Positions 23,962 through 34,271 of a DNA stretch of 64,000 nt are shown here, piece after piece. Within the stretch, counting starts at the first letter, position 1, and each line of letters begins with the position of its first letter. Source of the stretch: Selaginella moellendorffii (Eukaryota; Plantae; Lycopodiophyta); the NCBI RefSeq assembly GCF_000143415.4, contig NW_003314261.1, forward strand, positions 4,022,880-4,086,879. Reading direction: 5' to 3'. The position numbers and the translations under genes were made by a program. The notes under the pieces were generated by a model. The model was not told the DNA's origin. It saw only the letters and a program-made list of their open reading frames with translations, and did not search any database.

Positions 23962-24637
23962 CCCAAATATCCCAAGACCCTTAACCGATTGGAAAAGGGG
24001 GTGCACTCTTATTCATGGGCCCTTTCCCTCTATATTTGAACCTTTATGGATCGTCTCTCGAGTCGTTCTCTTTGGTTGCTTACACACTACCACTAGATCA
24101 AGGCCTGCAGGCCTAGCCACTAAGTCCCATTGTTCTCTAGGACTTCCTCACCATATGATTATATCCGTAGTCACTACACTAGAGGATTGTTCTTCCTCTT
24201 TTCCCCATTTGGGATTTCGGGACAACATTTCGGAACACCATGGCCCTACGCGAGCCTCATGGGTACTCTTCCCACCTTCCACCTTTAGGTGCTCTAGCCA
24301 TGGGCTTAGAGCGAGGTTCCGTTGAGCCACACTAAGTATCCAAGTAGGTAGTGCCACCCACACTTGGACTGGGAGCATCGGCCAGTCGATCTCCTAGGAG
24401 AACTAGAGCTGACTCTCGAACACTTCACCAAGATACCCTGCTTGTTGGTCCATATTCACTTTAGTCTTAGACTTCCCAGTGGTCAGTTCATCACCCAACA
24501 CTGGGTCTGGCCTTCCTGGGCTAAATTGGCCTTTCTTGGGCAAACTGGCTCCACTGTAGTCCTCCCCCTTACTATACTTTTGGAGCTCACCAAACCCCCC
24601 AAGGTCTGGGAGACGAACGCTTTGGGCTTTCACCCTC

Positions 24638-25292
24638 TTAGACTCGGACTCGGACTCGAACTCGGACTCAGACTCGGACTCGAACTCGAACTCGGACTCG
24701 AACTCGAACTCGGACTCAGACTCGGACTCGGACTCAGACTCGGACTCGGACTTGGACTTGGACTCGGACTCAGGCTCGGGCTCGGGCTCGGTCTCGGCCT
24801 CGGTCCCAGTCTCGGTCCCGGTCTCGGTCTCGGTCTCGGTCTCGATCTCAGTCCCGGTCTCGGTCTTCGTCCTGGTCTCGGTCTCGACCTCGGACTCCAT
24901 CTCGGGTTCTTCTCAGACTCCATCTCAGATTCCATCTCGAGTCCATCTCAGACTCCATCTTGGACTCCGTCTCGGTCCATCTCGGACTCCATCTCGGGTC
25001 CTTCTCGGACTCCATCTCGAACTCCATCTCGGACTCCACCTCATACTCCAACTCGGGTTCATCTCGGACTCCATCTCAGGTCCACCTCGGACTCCATCTT
25101 GGATTCCAACTCGGGTCCATCTCGGACTCCATCTCAGACTCCATCTCGGGTCCACCTCGGACTCCATCTCAAACTCCATCTCGGGTCCACCTCAGACTCC
25201 ATCTCAGACTCCAACTCGGGTCCATCTCAGACTCCATCTCGGACTCCATCTCGGGTCCACCTCGGACTTCATCTCGGACTCCAACTCGGGTC
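24638..25292. repeat. Hierarchical minisatellite: (GACTCG/GGTCTC)n hexamers grading into 12- and 24-bp units (GGACTCCATCTC / GGGTCCACCTC)
   Basis: Directly visible; generates spurious LG-, SP- and ES-repeat ORFs. Confidence 0.95.
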
Positions 25293-25480
25293 CCTTTTTG
25301 GAGCCTTGTTTATTGCTTGCTTCATGCTCGTTCTTTGAGCACTCCGTTGGGAGTTCTATTTCTGCTCTTAACCTTTCAAGTTGGAGCCTTTTAGTCCAAA
25401 TGTGTTACGCTCGTTTGGCTTTTGCTTTAGCCACTACCACGTGGCACTTTGGGGCTTAGGGATTTGTGTCTCACAAATAG

Positions 25481-27066: not shown

Positions 27067-27069
<3 letters not shown>

Positions 27070-27119
<50 letters not shown>
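27070..27119. repeat. (GA)25 microsatellite followed by a diverged ~50-bp local duplication (27111-27160 / 27192-27243)
   Basis: Directly visible. Confidence 0.95.
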
Positions 27120-27122
<3 letters not shown>

Positions 27123-28093
27123 TGACATCTGGTACATGAATTATTTAGGGTGTTTAGTTCTTGAAATGAAGTGTTATTTACATCAAGTCAAAGAGAGAGA
27201 GAATTCAACATTTGGTACATGCATTATTTAGGGTGTTTTGTTCAGTTCATTTGGAGTTGGTTTCACTCTAGAATAGTTATAAATAACTTGGAGAAGATAG
27301 AGTTCACTATAATGGTCTGGTAATCTTCTGGGACCATAGGATCTCCAGATTTATAGATGGGAACCACACAGTTTAAAGTCCATTCCTGAGGGAAATCTTG
27401 ATGTGCTGCTCATTCAAAGAAGATGCACCACAGGGTCTCCACAGATGCACTCTCCATGCCTGGTATTTTGTTGTGAAAGGAACAGAAAAGGTATGGCCAC
27501 CTCTTCTTTTTAGTTGACACATCTCTTGACTGGCAAGTGTTTTTGATTCAAGAACAACTTTCCAAGAACAGCAAGTCTGATGGTATTAAGATGACTCGCG
27601 TTCATCTTGCAGCGCCATGTAAGTGAGTATGTTATCTGGGAAATACACTATTGATAAAATTTGCAGGTTGTGGTCATGGGAATGGAAAGTGACCAAGAGA
27701 ACAGATGGTCGGGACGGACACTTGCTCCATCCATGCAGGTCAATGCATTTTTTACTGCCTGAAAACCTGTTGCGTCCCAGGAATGTTGCTTCTACACAAC
27801 GTATCAAGCTCTTGAATAAAGGTCCTTTATCATATATTTGTATGTATTGTCACGCCTCACACTTTGCCAATGAGATCAAGTCAATTTTGAATACCTTGGA
27901 ACAACTGTATTCATGCGTGCAACTTAACTCTTGCAAAACTTTTCCAGGTCAGAGATAAGTCCATCTGAAACGCAGTCCAGCTGAAAAACTTGTTGAATGA
28001 AGCTTGTAATCTTCCTTTTTCAATTTATTCTCATAGTTTGACACTCTTGAACGATACCAGCTTTTAATTCTTGGCAACTTGGTGGCTAGGGCA

Positions 28094-29431
28094 ATGGGCG
28101 AGGGGGAGATTCGCGCTTGCTGCCGCCGGCTTTCGATCCACTCGCGTCTTTGCTGGGCTGCAAATGTCCAAACTTGCGTCGCTGATGATCCCGCCAAAGC
28201 GGCCAGCAGCAGCAGGATTTCTTGTGGCAGCAGCGTTGCCAAAGAGCAGCTGAGCAGGAAAGATGCGTTTGAGCTGATTGAAAGCTTGTACCGGGATCAT
28301 CCAGCGCCGGTTTGGCGGGTACGCACTCGCTCCTCTTAGTTTCGTTCTACGCGATGGATCATCATCTTCCAGGTAGAGAGTAGGAAAGCAATGGAGATAC
28401 AGCAGCACAGTCTTAAAACTTCCAAGTGTCTCATCTATGGAGAAGTCAGTTTTTTCTTCCTTTTTTGTGTTCTTCCGCCACAGTGGTGTGTTGTTTCTTT
28501 TTTGCTTCGACGCTCTCAGGTAAGCTTTATAGCTTTTGCAAGGATGCTGGAGCTGTGTGTGCCTCTGGCTATGGGGGACTCCTCGGGGAAAGGCTTCGCG
28601 TTCTACGACTTGGGATGTGGTGCTGGCCGTCCTGTGTTTCTAGCTCCAATGTTGCGGCCGGACTGCGTGAAATCTTGTGGAATCGAGATTATCCCAAGTA
28701 TGTCTGTTTTTTCGCTGTATGCAAAAGTTCTTATGTGTTGTTTCGTTTTGTCAGGCATGCACGAGATGAATCAGGAGCTACTTCTGCTGTACAAATTGGA
28801 GGTTCAAGAAGAAGAAAAAAAAAAAGTTGTATGGACACTTACACTTAACTTGAGATTGTTTTGCAGGTTCTCCCTTATTTGCATCCTTCCAGACGCGATC
28901 AAGACATCAGTTTTGTTCGAGGAGACTTTCTCCAGGTGCTGTTTCATGTTTACTGTTTTTTTCTCAAGCGGATTAATGGCATTTCCATTTTCAGGAAGAC
29001 TGGTCAGACGCCGACATTGTTTTTGCGAACGCAACATGTTTTGATGATCCATTATTCGAGCAGCTTGAGGTATGTTTATGTTTTGCTTTAGGAGGAGAAG
29101 GAAAGGAGAATTATTCTCTCCTAACTTTCCCCACCAGCAAAGAGCTACTCAGACACTGCGAAATGGCTCGATTGTGATTTCCGTTACAAAGCGGTTTTCT
29201 GGTGGCTCCTGGGAGCTTGTCCAACGGCAAGAGATGAAAATGAGCTGGGCGCCAGCGATCGTTCACGTCCAGAGGAAGAAGCAGCAAAATCCACACTCAG
29301 ACAAACAAACAACAGACAATCACATCTCAGCGAAAGTGATACAGGTTCTCCAGATAGAAACTACAAAAGATCATGTCTCACAGACACTGATAACTTTCAC
29401 AGATCACGAAGCGTTCGAGCAGCAACAATGA
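28094..29431 (+). CDS. DOT1-like class I SAM-dependent methyltransferase; about 7 exons
   Basis: Spliced translation: LIYGE|VSF, FYDLGCGAGRPVF (motif I), SCGIEI (post-I), FVRGDFLQ|EDWSDADIVFANATCFD (motif II), LRNGSIVISVTK, MSWAPAIVHV; canonical GT-AG introns keep the frame. Confidence 0.72.
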
Positions 29432-30795
29432 CAAAATTTAGAGGTTGGTCATTCTTTCGGATAGGAAAAAACGCGATTTTGTGGGCGCTCACATGTTTCT
29501 CACGTCGGTGTTTGATTGCAGCAACAGTCACCACTACTAGGATCGAATAAAAAGAGGGGAAAAAAAAAAGCCTGCGCCGTTTCCAGTGGAAGGTCGTTCG
29601 TATGCTGGAGAGCAAGCTGGATCTCGTTCGTTTTCCTCGACAACTTGGATCTCTCATGTGGCAGCGCATCAAAGCCAGCCTTAAATTCACGCACTTTTGT
29701 TTGTAAGGTTCGTGGTTGGTGTTCTTCTGGTTCTGACTCTCTCTTTCTTTCGTTTTTCTTTCCTGATCGACTACAAAGAGTGGGATATGAGGAAGAACTT
29801 GGAACTTGTGTTCTGTGCATGGCTCAAAATCCGGCCTTTTCACATGCGCGCACGAGGTGTTTTTAGAACCGATCTCTCACTGGCAGAAACAGACGTCGAC
29901 GCTCCTGGAAAATTCGCCTCTCCAGGGAGAAATCACTAAAAACTCGCCGACGCAAGCAAGCAGAGATTCATCCTTTTCTTTGCTAAGTCAACCTCCAATC
30001 ATCCGGGATCAAGTAGCTGAGAAGTAAGAACTTAGTGCGATCCGGAAGATAAACAAATCACAGGCAAACAAGAGCAAAAACAATGAATTCTTCTCGAGGA
30101 ACAGTTGCGACTTTAAAGGCAAAACTTGGTGGCATCAATCACAACGAGGAAAGAGAAAACGAGGGAGCATCCAAGGAGAAAGACGGACAGTCACCACTAT
30201 CTACGTATACGCATACATTCAAACCGTGTTCCAGGGGGCGGTCAGCCGTAGTTATAAATCGGACACGGCTGGCTGCCAGCGAGCCAGCAGCAACAGAGAA
30301 AAAAAAAATCGAAAAAACAAGAGAAAAAGAATGAAAAAGTGGACAAAAATCACCACCTTGAAACCAGAGTCATCCGCGTTTCCTCCATTACCAGGCAAGA
30401 ACACTCACACTTTGATCTTCTTCGTTTTTTCCTTTCACTACTTCGAATCTTCTCTTTAGCTCTTCTCTTCCATTTATAAACCCACTTCTCACGCCTTGTC
30501 TACGAAAGAGTGTTTTGTTCCTTGCGTCTCTCGGCCGGGTGTGGGTTGTCTCGATCCTTTCTCGCTGGTGATCCAGATGGGCTTGCTAGATTTGTAGCGG
30601 AGCAGCCAAAGTTTTCTTCTTCCATGATCCGGAAGTTTATTCGTCTATAGCATTGGTTTCTCAGCTCCAGCGATGGCCTCTCGCTAAGCCCGCTCCTTGC
30701 TCCTTTTTCTGCTTGAAACACAGCAGGAAGAGAGGGAGTTTTACTTCGCTTTCCATCTCGTGCTGGCTTGGACACCGATTTGGCAGCCCAGGAGC

Positions 30796-32874
30796 ATGGA
30801 GCTCCGACCTGCATTGGCGGTTCTCGTGCTGCTTGTCCTCGCGAGCTGCGCCAGGGGCGAAGACCCATACCTCTACTTTGAGTGGAATGTCTCGTTTGTG
30901 GATCTGGCGCCTCTGGGAGCTCCTCAAAGAGTAAGAGCTCAAGCTTTAGCTATGTGGCCAAGTTTCTCATGGTTTTTTTTTCCTTTCTTTTTGATTCTTT
31001 TGGTTTTGTAGGTGATTGCTATCAACAACCAGCTTCCAGGGCCTGAGATCGCCGTGACCACCAACAACAACCTCGAGATCAATGTTTTCAACAGCCTGGA
31101 CGAGCCTCTTCTTTTCACCTGGTAAGAGATTTTCTCAAAGAAATGTTTGGACATGGTTTCATTCAAGTTTTTTCTTCCAGGAATGCGGTGTGGATGAGGA
31201 GAAGTTCATGGCAAGACGGTGTGCTTGGAACAAATTGTCCAATCCCACCGGGAGCAAACTGGACTTACAAGTTCCAAGTGAAAGACCAGATTGGGAGTGG
31301 CTTCTACTATCCTTCGCTGCTCATGCAACGAGCTGCTGGAGGCTATGGTGGAATCCGGATTTACAACAGGGCAGTCATTGCGGTTCCATTTGCTCCACCA
31401 GCCGGAGACATCACAATGCTCATTGGAGATTGGTACAAGCAAAACCACACTGTAAGTCTCTCGTTGTTTCTTCCTTCTCTCTTCTTTAACTTGAGCTGTT
31501 CTTCGTTTTTCTCGCAGGCTTTGCGAGGAACTTTAGATGCTGGATTCATGATCGGTGCTCCGGACGGTGTGCTTATCAATGGCAGGGGTCCCTATGGATC
31601 ATACTTTGTCGTAGAGCCAGGTATGTAGAACTAAGTTGGTGATAGCGATGTGAGAAGAAAAATCGATTTTTTTCTTGCAGCAAACACTTACCGATTGAGG
31701 ATATCAAACGTTGGAATTTCCACAACACTCAACTTTAGAATCGAAGGCCACCGGATGCTCCTGGTGGAGACCGAGGGCTCCTACACCGTCCAGAACTTCT
31801 ACGACTCGCTGGACGTTCACGTCGGCCAGTCTTACTCGGTAATCATCACCACCGATCAAGCACCGGGAGACTTCCACATTGTCGCGAGCAGTCGCTTTGG
31901 AGTTCCAGTTTTAACCGGACTGGCAACCCTCCACTACAGCAATTCTCCGTCAACTCTCGGTGGAACACTCCCCCCGGGGCCCGATCCAGGCGATGTTGGT
32001 TTCTCGTTCAATCAAGCTTGGTCCATCAGGTAGAAAAATAAAAGAGCTCTTTTTCTTCTGTTCTCGAGGATCGTTCTAAGTTCTTGTGGCTCTTTTCCAG
32101 ATGGAACTTGACAGCAGGAGCTGCCAGGCCAAATCCTCAAGGCTCCTTCCACTATGGAGTGATCAACGTGTCAAGAACTATCAAGCTCTTCAACACTGCT
32201 CCCATGATCAACGGCAAGCAGCGGTTTGCGGTGAACGACATCTCCTACTTTAATCCGGACACGCCTCTCAAGCTCGCCGATTACTACAAGATCCCAGGCG
32301 TTTTCTCTCTCAACTCCATCCCGGATTCCCCCTACTTCAGCACCCCGTTCCTCGGAACCTCGGTTCTCAACGTGGACTACCACAGCTTCATCGAGATCAT
32401 CTTTCAGAACAATGAGGAGGTGATCCAGTCGTGGCATATTGACGGCTACCAGTTTTTCGTGGTCGGGTACGTACTTAGATGACGAAAAGAATGAAGAAAA
32501 AATGAGTTTTTACTTGGTATGTTTCATCCAGATTCGGACCCGGAGCTTGGAACGATACCAGCAGGCTAACTTACAATCTCTACGATGCTGTTGCTCGATC
32601 CACGACCCAGGTACGTGTGCTTGGATCCTTCAGAGGTTCGTTTCTTCGTGCTCAAAGCAGGAAAACTTTGCAGGTCTATCCAATGTCCTGGACTGCAATC
32701 TTCATGTCCCTGGACAACGTCGGAATGTGGGAGATTCGCTCGCAAAACCCCGCGCGGCAATACTTGGGCCAGGATCTCTACATGCGAGTTTACAACCCGG
32801 AGGAGGCTAGGAGCACGGAGACGGCAATTCCCAGCAACGTTCTTCGCTGCGGCAAAGCCGTGGGTCTAAACTAG
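30796..32874 (+). CDS. SKS: SKU5-similar (SKS) / L-ascorbate oxidase homolog, multicopper oxidase fold
   Basis: Signal peptide, EDPYLYFEWNV, SWQDGVLGTNCPIPPG, VKDQIGS, LLVETEGSYT, WNLTAGAARPNPQGSFHYG, SWHIDGYQFFVVG, LDNVGMW; copper-ligand histidines mostly absent, as typical of SKS. Confidence 0.93.
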
Positions 32875-33038: not shown

Positions 33039-34271
33039 CTAGAACTTTAGAGAGAGTGAGAGAGGCGCACAGGTTGCTCTAGTCGTCGCGCCTCCAAAGT
33101 CGGGCATGGTAGTGTGGCTATAACAAGCATCGTCGAGCTTTTCAGTTGCTCCTCCGGATCCACTCAAGAGAGCGCTGGTGTTCTTGTGGGTGATGAGAAC
33201 TCCACTGTTGCTGCTGCTACCGCTGCCGTGATCTTGCGGATTGCTGCCAATGAATCCATCGAATTGGTGGTACTGGATCTCAAATTGTTGCTGTTGCTGC
33301 TGGTATAATTGCCTCAAACTCTCGGCCTCTTTTCGAAGAGCTTCGTTGTGAGCTGCCAAAAGATCAATCGTAGAGATCATCGAAAAAAAAAAACAAGTGT
33401 TTTCTTGTAAACATACCGTCCTTGAGACGCACATTTTGCACCAATGCAGCTATCCTCTGCTTCATAACACCGTTGTCGACGTTCAAAAGAACTCTTTGGT
33501 GGTCCAAAAATGAGACCTGAGGTGTGAGTGTTGACACTTCCATCTTTTTCAAACGAAAATAGATGGTCAAAAGGTGTTGTATGAATTGATTGGCAATCTT
33601 ACCTGTAAGGAACTTACGTTCTTCTCCAATTCTGCTATGTACTGTAGCTTTCTTATCCGCGACCTCTGAGCAGATTGCCTGTTTGCAATGATCCTACATT
33701 TTTTCACAAAGTTTATGAAACATAAGATCTTCACAAAAGAGAGAAAACAAAGCCTATGAAACAGAGAGAGTGCGAGAGAGGCAGAGGAAAGCATACCTTC
33801 TGGCTCTTTTCGGATCCAAGCTGGGATCGAGAGATATATCATCGTCTAGAACTTGATTGGCGACAACAACACAATCACCATCCTGGCCATCGGAGATTGT
33901 TGGCGATGAATTCTTGGGGGAGATATCAATTTTGTTCATAGAACCCTCGAGAAGAACATCTGAGAGCTGTTGTGGATTCTTGACAAGCTGCTCCTCTTTC
34001 TCATGTCTCTCATCTGTTTGTGCAATTGCTGGAGGAGGGCTGGCGTTATCGATAAAAGCGGCAGTGTCACTCACAGATCTCCTGTGTTTGACTGAGGAAG
34101 TGGTAGCACTGCTGTTGGAATAGTCGTTCATCAACCAGCCTGTGTGTCATGAATTGTGGAGAGCGAATTAAAACCCAAATCACTTGCAAGTACTTGCCTA
34201 CCAGTTGAGTGGATTTTGTTGCTCCCGAAATTGGGCAATCCAAATCCAAGAGGCCATCCAAAATCTTCCAT
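33039..34271 (-). CDS. bZIP transcription factor, group E (bZIP34/bZIP61-like)
   Basis: MEDFGWPLG.. exon 1; KHRRSVSD; DPKRARR|IIANRQSAQRSRIRKLQYIAELE; zipper with proline (TLTPQVSFLDHQR); HNEALRKEAESLRQLY. Confidence 0.88.

What the first reader, a model, noticed from the sequence alone, without database searches (positions are those of the whole stretch)
28094..29431. Intact, spliced DOT1-family methyltransferase in a land plant
Seen: a frame-preserving multi-exon gene with YGE, FYDLGCGAG, GIE, IVFANATCF and terminal MSW motifs. Known: this ordered set (YGE; DLGSGxG; GxE; hhFxNN; SW) is the DOT1 H3K79 methyltransferase signature, and flowering plants are considered to lack DOT1 and H3K79 methylation. 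Inference: seed-free plants may retain a DOT1-like enzyme, implying either unrecognised H3K79-type methylation or a non-histone substrate. One option is a target linked to flagellated sperm or an organelle, given the Arg/Ser/Ala-rich N-terminal extension.
Basis: partly seen in the sequence, partly recalled or inferred. Interest (0 to 1): 0.78.

Follow-up and report, generated by a model that had tools for sequence, protein, structure and literature searches.

The report
Short DOT1-like methyltransferase gene in Selaginella
The stretch holds a real, expressed and spliced DOT1-family methyltransferase gene of the spikemoss Selaginella moellendorffii. It is already in the databases and in a 2016 paper, and it resembles a short, non-histone DOT1-like enzyme of Legionella more than the classical H3K79 histone enzyme.

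Summary
A GT-AG gene on the + strand starts at 28094. They also show a seventh coding intron (29345-29402), which moves the stop to TAG 29439-29441 and gives 303 aa instead of 319.

The window is Selaginella moellendorffii, and the gene is SELMODRAFT_402649 (UniProt D8QML4), already auto-named "H3 lysine-79 specific" methyltransferase. A 2016 paper already states that S. moellendorffii keeps Dot1 while angiosperms lack it.

The DOT1 assignment is sound. Pfam PF08123 scores 44.5 bits against a cut-off of 23, and the predicted fold matches DOT1 structures. The closest solved relative is 9NE1, Legionella LpDot1. That enzyme showed no activity on histones and methylates the non-histone protein SFPQ.

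Like LpDot1, the plant protein has no room for the DOT1L loop 273-286 or the C-terminal helix 319-331, and it lacks the F131 equivalent. These are the parts DOT1L needs on nucleosomes. Orthologues form one clade in lycophytes, ferns, mosses and liverworts, and no seed-plant orthologue was found.

The most likely reading is an active lysine methyltransferase of the short DOT1-like clade with an unknown substrate, probably not nucleosomal H3K79. The scan had no earlier DOT1 note.

The parts
28058..28093 (+). 5' UTR (minimum extent)
   Evidence: An X1 contig piece begins at 28058. No RNA depth was seen over 27700-28023. An in-frame TAG at 28037-28039 lies upstream of the start, and there is no other ATG between it and 28094 (read).
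28094..28318 (+). Exon 1: start codon, conserved N-terminal helix motif (CRRLSIHSRL) and the LYRDHP helix
   Evidence: The Diphasiastrum orthologue P0003 starts at the equivalent methionine.
28373..28444 (+). Exon 2, ending in the YGE motif
   Evidence: joints 28317>28372 cut +1 and 28444>28520.
28520..28697 (+). Exon 3: SAM motif I (FYDLGCGAG) and post-I GIE
28755..28801 (+). Exon 4
28867..28935 (+). Exon 5: RGDFL motif (DOT1L D222/F223 equivalents)
28995..29069 (+). Exon 6: DWSDADIVFANATCF (DOT1L N241 equivalent = N209)
29138..29344 (+). Exon 7: last beta strands and the MSW hairpin (W259 = DOT1L W305 position), then an unconserved tail
29403..29443 (+). Exon 8: last 12 codons and the TAG stop at 29439-29441
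   Evidence: Joint 29340>29399 (cut +4) in the X1 contig and one X10 read; translation.
29522..29702 (+). 3' UTR exon. It follows intron 29444-29521 and is followed by intron 29703-29778. The transcript end was not determined.
   Evidence: Joints. RNA depth continues to about 29967.

Best explanation
The gene encodes an active S-adenosylmethionine-dependent protein lysine methyltransferase with a DOT1 fold. It belongs to the short, catalytic-domain-only DOT1-like clade, whose one characterised member is Legionella LpDot1 (PDB 9NE1). It keeps the SAM pocket and the lysine-channel residues. It has no room for the DOT1L loop and helix that grip the nucleosome acidic patch and ubiquitin. It therefore most likely methylates a lysine on a substrate other than nucleosomal H3K79, either a non-histone (possibly nuclear) protein or at most free histone. 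A conserved, plant-specific N-terminal helix probably serves targeting or regulation.

The gene was inherited vertically in land plants and is retained in lycophytes, ferns, mosses and liverworts. No seed-plant orthologue was found. Shown here: the gene structure, expression, family, fold, motif conservation, missing elements and phyletic pattern. Inferred: catalytic activity, substrate class and the role of the N-terminal helix.
For: Gene structure and expression.

Family and fold: Pfam DOT1 scores 44.5 bits against a gathering score of 23, E 1.7e-11, and six homologues also pass. Sequence matches to solved structures are LpDot1 9NE1 at E 1.1e-19 and DOT1L at 3e-4. With the family profile, 9NE1 scores 5.4e-40, DOT1L 5e-13, yeast Dot1p 1.6e-11 and archaeal aKMT 1.8e-7. 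The AF2 model has a core pLDDT of about 90. Foldseek ranks 9NE1 first (TM 0.83 on the target, rmsd 2.7), followed by Dot1p and DOT1L. VIA-align gives Z 25.0 for 9NE1 (198 of 203 residues aligned), about 22 for DOT1L, 19 for Dot1p, 18.8 for T. brucei DOT1A and 15-16 for generic class I methyltransferases.

Conserved residues: Y97, G98, E99, D129, G131, G133, G135, E155, D194, N209 and W259 are kept in the land-plant sequences that cover them; F195 is F in 6 of 8 and M in 2.

Missing elements: the spacing from F242 to W259 is 17-18 residues across the family, against 35 in DOT1L (F270 to W305). Most members end 11-13 residues after the tryptophan. The F131 equivalent is S, R, A or V in plants. 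The LpDot1 preprint reports no activity on calf histones, methylation of SFPQ K518, and absence of DOT1L loop 273-286 and helix 319-331.

Other support: the catalytic domain has net charge -2 and pI 6.25. Land plants form one clade with SH-aLRT 99, sister to an environmental eukaryote-like sequence and then a stramenopile group, and apart from Legionella.
Against: No biochemical data exist for any plant member. Small size does not rule out histone activity, since the small Trypanosoma DOT1A (8FJM, named in its PDB entry as an H3K76 methyltransferase) aligns at Z 18.8. The LpDot1 preprint also mentions another bacterial DOT1-like enzyme that trimethylates H3K79. W305, which helps position H3K79 in DOT1L, is conserved. 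LpDot1 is a bacterial effector that may have been repurposed, so its substrate need not reflect the eukaryotic ancestors. The tree contained no canonical DOT1 sequences, because none could be fetched by reference, so the two-clade picture rests on score differences, insertions and deletions, and the preprint's report of long and short forms in Acanthamoeba.
Confidence: 0.6

Rival explanations
1. It is a true H3K79 histone methyltransferase, a functional DOT1 orthologue, so seed-free land plants carry DOT1-dependent H3K79 methylation that seed plants lost.
For: Pfam DOT1 is above threshold. The fold match to DOT1L and Dot1p is strong, Z about 19-22. The SAM and lysine-channel residues, including the N241 and W305 equivalents, are kept. 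Small DOT1 enzymes of trypanosomes are histone enzymes (8FJM title). The LpDot1 preprint cites another bacterial DOT1-like enzyme that trimethylates H3K79.
Against: The protein is far closer to LpDot1, which did not methylate histones. It has no counterpart of DOT1L loop 273-286 or helix 319-331, and no aromatic residue at the F131 position. The catalytic domain is near neutral. No basic DNA-binding tail is conserved, since the Marchantia proteins end at YRKK.
Confidence: 0.22
2. It methylates something other than a protein lysine, such as RNA or a small molecule, and uses a DOT1-like fold only as a scaffold.
For: Generic class I methyltransferase profiles (Methyltransf_31 at 26.5 bits, just under its cut-off) also match. 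A Salinibacter 'RNA methyltransferase' (5BXY) and RsmD-type enzymes align at Z 15-17.
Against: All the best matches by sequence and fold are protein lysine methyltransferases: LpDot1, DOT1L, Dot1p, TbDOT1A and aKMT. The DOT1-specific YGE, N209 and SW elements that shape the lysine channel are conserved.
Confidence: 0.1
3. It is a decaying or non-functional remnant, or a recent bacterial transfer or contaminant.
For: Expression is low. Intron 1 is retained in one contig piece. The 3' UTR carries two introns downstream of the stop, which could invite nonsense-mediated decay. Close relatives are common in Legionellales and Patescibacteria.
Against: The frame is open across eight coding exons with spliceosomal introns confirmed by RNA. 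Catalytic residues are invariant. Both Selaginella copies (P0001 and P0011) are kept, at 98% identity over the conserved columns. Land-plant orthologues form one well-supported clade separate from the bacterial sequences.
Confidence: 0.04

Closest known systems
LpDot1 of Legionella pneumophila (lpp3025; PDB 9NE1; bioRxiv 10.64898/2026.01.11.698932)
   Same: It is the best sequence and fold match (E 1.1e-19 for the single sequence, 5.4e-40 for the profile; Z 25.0 with 198 of 203 residues aligned at rmsd 2.2). The two are colinear from the LYRDHP-type helix to the end. They share the YGE, DxGxGxG, GxE, GDF and MSW motifs, the same 17-residue spacing before the SW hairpin, and an end about 11 residues after it. 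Neither has a phenylalanine at the DOT1L F131 position.
   Different: Identity is only about 27-29%. The plant protein is an endogenous, intron-containing eukaryotic gene, not a secreted bacterial effector. It has an extra N-terminal region of about 50 residues with a plant-specific conserved helix, and it keeps W200 where most bacterial members have F or L. LpDot1's substrate, SFPQ, is a human protein, so the plant substrate is unknown.
Human DOT1L and yeast Dot1p (KMT4), the nucleosomal H3K79 methyltransferases
   Same: They share the Pfam family (PF08123) and the fold, including the helical N-lobe (model 42-283 aligns to DOT1L 40-332, Z about 22). The equivalents of D161, G163, G165, G167, E186, D222, F223, N241 and W305 are conserved (DOT1L numbering from the 1NW3-type chains and).
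   Different: Identity is about 18%. There are 17 rather than 35 residues between the KPF-equivalent strand and SW, so the loop 273-286 has no counterpart. There is no helix 319-331, no F131 equivalent, N242 is replaced by A and F243 by T, and no conserved basic DNA-binding tail is present. The domain is near neutral.
Trypanosoma brucei DOT1A (PDB 8FJM/8FJN)
   Same: It is a small DOT1-fold enzyme of similar size and aligns at Z 18.8.
   Different: Sequence similarity is weak, limited to the motif I region, with profile E 2.6e-6. The PDB entry names it a histone H3K76 enzyme.
Archaeal aKMT/aKMT4 of Sulfolobus (PDB 5FA8, 5FAD, 5JWJ)
   Same: It is a minimal DOT1-like protein lysine methyltransferase, matched at profile E 1.8e-7 and Z 18.
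   Different: It is about 160 aa, lacks the N-terminal helices, and is more distant than LpDot1 or DOT1L.

Membership tests
DOT1 domain family (Pfam PF08123) | Whole-protein score above Pfam's gathering threshold | tested here: met
   The score is 44.5 bits against 23, E 1.7e-11, covering profile positions 21-167 of 205. Six homologues score 29.7-40 bits.
DOT1 domain family (Pfam PF08123) | SAM-binding motifs: DxGxGxG (motif I), acidic post-I residue (GxE) and GDF (D222/F223 equivalents) | tested here: met
   The residues are D129-L-G-C-G-A-G135, G153-I-E155 and G193-D-F195. The motif I and GxE residues and D194 are invariant in all land-plant members; F195 is M in two of eight.
DOT1 domain family (Pfam PF08123) | DOT1-type fold: class I methyltransferase core plus N-terminal helical lobe and C-terminal beta hairpin | tested here: met
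   The AF2 model matches 9NE1 at Z 25, DOT1L at about 22 and Dot1p at 19, with generic methyltransferases at 15-16.
Canonical nucleosomal H3K79 methyltransferase (DOT1L/Dot1p, KMT4) | Nucleosome acidic-patch loop (DOT1L residues 273-286) | tested here: not met
   Only 17-18 residues separate F242 from W259, against 35 in DOT1L (F270 to W305). The spacing matches LpDot1, which lacks the loop.
Canonical nucleosomal H3K79 methyltransferase (DOT1L/Dot1p, KMT4) | C-terminal helix 319-331 that contacts H2A/H2B and ubiquitin | tested here: not met
   Conservation stops about 11 residues after the SW motif. The Marchantia orthologues end there. The Selaginella tail has pLDDT below 50 and is not conserved.
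Canonical nucleosomal H3K79 methyltransferase (DOT1L/Dot1p, KMT4) | F131 and W305 pair that positions H3K79 | tested here: inconclusive
   The W305 equivalent (W259) is conserved. The F131 equivalent is S92 here and R, A or V in other land plants.
Canonical nucleosomal H3K79 methyltransferase (DOT1L/Dot1p, KMT4) | Methylates H3K79 in nucleosomes | not testable with these tools
   This needs enzyme assays and histone mass spectrometry.
Short catalytic-domain-only DOT1-like clade (LpDot1 type) | Closest to LpDot1 in sequence and structure, and colinear with it without large insertions | tested here: met
   The profile scores 140.8 bits to 9NE1, against 52 bits to DOT1L. 198 of 203 residues align.
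Short catalytic-domain-only DOT1-like clade (LpDot1 type) | Non-histone protein substrate | not testable with these tools
   This is known only for LpDot1. The preprint states that the substrates of eukaryotic members are unknown.

The most novel reading that the evidence does not exclude
Seed-free land plants keep an LpDot1-type lysine methyltransferase that writes a so far unknown methyl mark on a non-histone protein, for instance a nuclear RNA-processing factor or a protein needed for motile sperm. A plant-specific N-terminal CRRLSIHSRL helix directs or regulates it, and the whole pathway was discarded in seed plants. The alternative novel reading is that it methylates H3K79 on free or nucleosomal H3, which would give bryophytes, lycophytes and ferns a chromatin mark that flowering plants lack.
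Probability: 0.35. Interest if true: 0.55.

Novelty: already known. Interest (0 to 1): 0.3.

Why it matters
This gene is not a discovery. It is catalogued as SELMODRAFT_402649 (UniProt D8QML4), and its presence in Selaginella with loss in angiosperms was published in 2016. What this check adds is a warning about the automatic name "H3 lysine-79 specific". The plant proteins belong with the short LpDot1-like enzymes and lack the parts DOT1L uses on nucleosomes. Nobody should therefore infer H3K79 methylation in seed-free plants from the gene's presence alone. The family has a single-copy Marchantia orthologue, Mp4g21560, which makes the substrate question directly testable.

Tried and rejected
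1. Pfam on single exons gave only sub-threshold DOT1 and AdoMet_MTase hits. A PDB search with the exon 2-3 piece put arsenic methyltransferases first. Short pieces were misleading. The full-length reference P0001:74-392 resolved this.

2. A word-index search restricted to exon 3 found nothing. This was a sensitivity limit, not absence.

3. The database model P0001 adds 73 residues upstream (exons from about 27398). I rejected this for four reasons. There is no RNA depth over 27700-28023, and the X1 contig starts at 28058. An in-frame stop lies just upstream of 28040. The Diphasiastrum orthologue starts at the equivalent methionine. The haplotype copy P0011 has a different, non-homologous predicted N-terminus.

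4. The transit-peptide idea was rejected. Acidic residues sit at positions 3 and 5. The segment is a conserved predicted helix with pLDDT 71-84. In liverworts the motif lies about 90-110 residues inside the protein. No targeting predictor was available.

5. A text search for '9NE1' found nothing. The entry was identified through a Legionella/DOT1 search and the preprint's data statement.

6. Searches for Mp4g21560, Mapoly0090s0065, SELMODRAFT_402649 and MpDOT1 found no relevant paper.

8. A LINE reverse-transcriptase-like ORF at 27266-27367 (-) gave no Pfam hit.

Full report
**Observation.** All are flanked by GT-AG and the introns are 54-75 nt. The CDS is an open 960 nt, or 319 aa. It carries every motif listed: YGE, FYDLGCGAG, GIE, IVFANATCF and MSW.

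**Expression and splicing.** Public runs of the same organism were laid on 27700-30100. A transcript-like contig set (X1) and raw stranded RNA-seq reads (X9, X10) show GT..AG joints at all six modelled introns. All first mates lie on the - strand, which fits + strand RNA. A DNA-like contig (X6) is unspliced.

Three further introns appear: 29345-29402, 29444-29521 and 29703-29778. The real reading frame therefore continues in a short exon 29403-29443 and stops at TAG 29439-29441, giving 303 aa. Only the unconserved tail is affected.

No RNA was seen upstream of about 28024. One X1 contig piece (28292-28401) retains intron 1. Depth is low, at 18 and 2 reads in about 12% of two runs.

**Identity of the genome and gene.** An exhaustive HMMER search with the exon 2-3 piece found a 392-aa protein, P0001, at 98% identity. 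The word-index search and the cluster look-up identify it as SELMODRAFT_402649 of Selaginella moellendorffii (EFJ37956.1, UniProt D8QML4). UniRef already names it "Histone-lysine N-methyltransferase, H3 lysine-79 specific" and it carries a precomputed PF08123 hit. The 73 extra N-terminal residues of the database model are not supported (see Tried and rejected).

A second copy, SELMODRAFT_408223 (P0011), shows 89% best-local-alignment identity over the query, 95% in the MAFFT alignment and 98% over the conserved columns. It is probably the other haplotype.

PMC4822149 (2016) already states that a Dot1/Dot1L gene is present in S. moellendorffii and was probably lost in the angiosperm ancestor.

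**Family and fold.** The full protein scores 44.5 bits on Pfam DOT1 (gathering score 23, E 1.7e-11). The next family, Methyltransf_31, stays just below its cut-off. Among solved structures the best sequence match is 9NE1 (E 1.1e-19), with human DOT1L at 3e-4 and yeast Dot1p at 0.04. With a 17-sequence family profile these become 5.4e-40, 5e-13 and 1.6e-11, followed by archaeal aKMT at 1.8e-7.

An AlphaFold2 model (mean pLDDT 74, core about 90, disordered tail) was compared with solved structures:

| Structure | Foldseek | VIA-align Z |
|---|---|---|
| 9NE1 (LpDot1) | ranked first; TM 0.83 on the target, rmsd 2.7 | 25.0 (198 of 203 residues, rmsd 2.2) |
| DOT1L | ranked after Dot1p | about 22 |
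| Dot1p | ranked second | 19 |
| T. brucei DOT1A | not in top 50 | 18.8 |
| aKMT | ranks 18 and 34 | 18 |
| Generic class I methyltransferases | rank 50 (5BXY) | 15-16 |

**What 9NE1 is.** The preprint 10.64898/2026.01.11.698932 identifies 9NE1 as LpDot1 of Legionella pneumophila. According to it:
- LpDot1 shows no activity on calf histones.
- It methylates nuclear non-histone proteins, notably SFPQ K518.
- It lacks the DOT1L loop 273-286 and helix 319-331 that contact H2A/H2B and ubiquitin.
- It has alanine in place of F131.
- Short catalytic-domain-only forms coexist with long DOT1L-like forms in Acanthamoeba.
- The substrates of the protist homologues are unknown.

**Residue-level comparison.** In the HMMER alignments to DOT1L and in a 106-sequence family alignment, the DOT1L SAM-pocket and channel positions map as follows:

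| DOT1L residue | Selaginella residue | Note |
|---|---|---|
| Y136 / G137 / E138 | Y97 / G98 / E99 | |
| D161 / G163 / G165 / G167 | D129 / G131 / G133 / G135 | |
| E186 | E155 | |
| D222 / F223 | D194 / F195 | F195 is M in 2 of 8 land-plant sequences |
| N241 | N209 | |
| W305 | W259 | mapped through the LpDot1 alignment and the SW motif |

Apart from the F195 exception, these are invariant in the land-plant sequences that cover them. The differences are T139 to V, Q168 to R, N242 to A and F243 to T, and the F131 position is S92 (R, A or V in other land plants).

The distance from F242 to W259 is 17-18 residues throughout the family, against 35 in DOT1L. Most members end 11-13 residues after the tryptophan, and the Marchantia proteins end at YRKK. 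The loop and helix that DOT1L uses on nucleosomes therefore have no counterpart.

The catalytic domain is near neutral, with net charge -2 and pI 6.25. The assignment of roles to the DOT1L residues other than F131 and W305 rests on established DOT1L structural literature recalled from memory, not on a tool result.

**Distribution and descent.** Orthologues at 43-51% identity occur in:
- Diphasiastrum (lycophyte)
- Adiantum (fern)
- Ceratodon (moss)
- Marchantia polymorpha (Mp4g21560), M. paleacea and Calypogeia (liverworts)

No seed-plant protein appeared in the exhaustive partial-query search or in the two word-index searches of 5.8 billion proteins. More distant members come from Tribonema, Epipyxis, Blepharisma and environmental eukaryote-like contigs.

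A genome scan found 181 bacterial relatives. These are mostly Legionellales and Coxiellaceae, but also Patescibacteria (Roizman-, Magasanik- and Peregrinibacteria).

In a quick maximum-likelihood tree of 50 sequences, land plants form one clade (SH-aLRT 99). It is sister to one environmental sequence that shares the N-terminal motif, then to a stramenopile group. Legionella sequences lie elsewhere. Rows left out of the tree: the spurious hits P0007, P0008, P0010 and P0041; near-duplicate isoforms; and 55 of the 80 bacterial loci. No canonical DOT1 was included, so the tree has no root.

**N-terminal extension.** The first 30 residues form a predicted helix with pLDDT 71-84. It carries a consensus C-x-R-x-L-S-I-x-S-R-L shared by lycophyte, fern and liverwort proteins and by the environmental sister sequence. 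In liverworts it lies about 90-110 residues inside the protein, behind an acidic region. That argues against a cleavable organelle transit peptide and for a conserved interaction or regulatory element. Its function is unknown.

**Verdict.** The DOT1-family call is correct and is more than a generic methyltransferase match. The gene and its phyletic oddity are already on record.

The best-supported mechanism is an active lysine methyltransferase of the short LpDot1-like DOT1 clade acting on something other than nucleosomal H3K79 (confidence about 0.6). A true H3K79 enzyme remains possible (about 0.2). 

Noticed in passing
window 29345-29778: The stop codon (29439-29441) lies 2 nt before an exon junction, and the 3' UTR holds two more spliced introns (29444-29521 and 29703-29778). 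That layout could expose the mRNA to nonsense-mediated decay. Expression is low.
   Followed up: partly
window 28292-28401: One contig piece of run X1 reads straight through intron 1 (28319-28372), at higher word depth (8.9) than the spliced joint (3.9). The retained intron carries an in-frame stop. An ATG at 28391 could restart just before the YGE motif.
   Followed up: no
window 27398-28093: The public gene model (P0001) adds upstream coding exons that have no RNA support here. They also differ from the predicted N-terminus of the second Selaginella copy (P0011). This is probably an annotation artefact.
   Followed up: partly
window 27069-27120: A (GA)n microsatellite of about 50 nt lies in an AT-rich stretch (GC 0.32 over 26-28 kb) just upstream of the gene.
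   Followed up: no
window 31143-32479 (+) and 33570-33842 (-): The downstream neighbours are a multi-exon multicopper oxidase gene (Cu-oxidase_3, Cu-oxidase and Cu-oxidase_2 domains in successive ORFs) and a bZIP transcription factor on the opposite strand.
   Followed up: partly
window 24364-25459: A long, low-complexity repeat region reads as (GL)n, (SD)n and 'SRTPS'-type ORFs on both strands.
   Followed up: no
P0002 / P0042 (Ceratodon purpureus KC19_VG231300): By its locus tag, the moss orthologue sits on a 110.5-Mb record labelled chromosome V, the male sex chromosome of that species as I recall it.
   Followed up: no
loci L001-L080 (genome contigs): Short DOT1-like genes are widespread beyond Legionella. 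They occur in Coxiellaceae, Rickettsiales and several Patescibacteria lineages (Roizman-, Magasanik- and Peregrinibacteria), and some of these group nearer the eukaryotic clade than Legionella does.
   Followed up: partly
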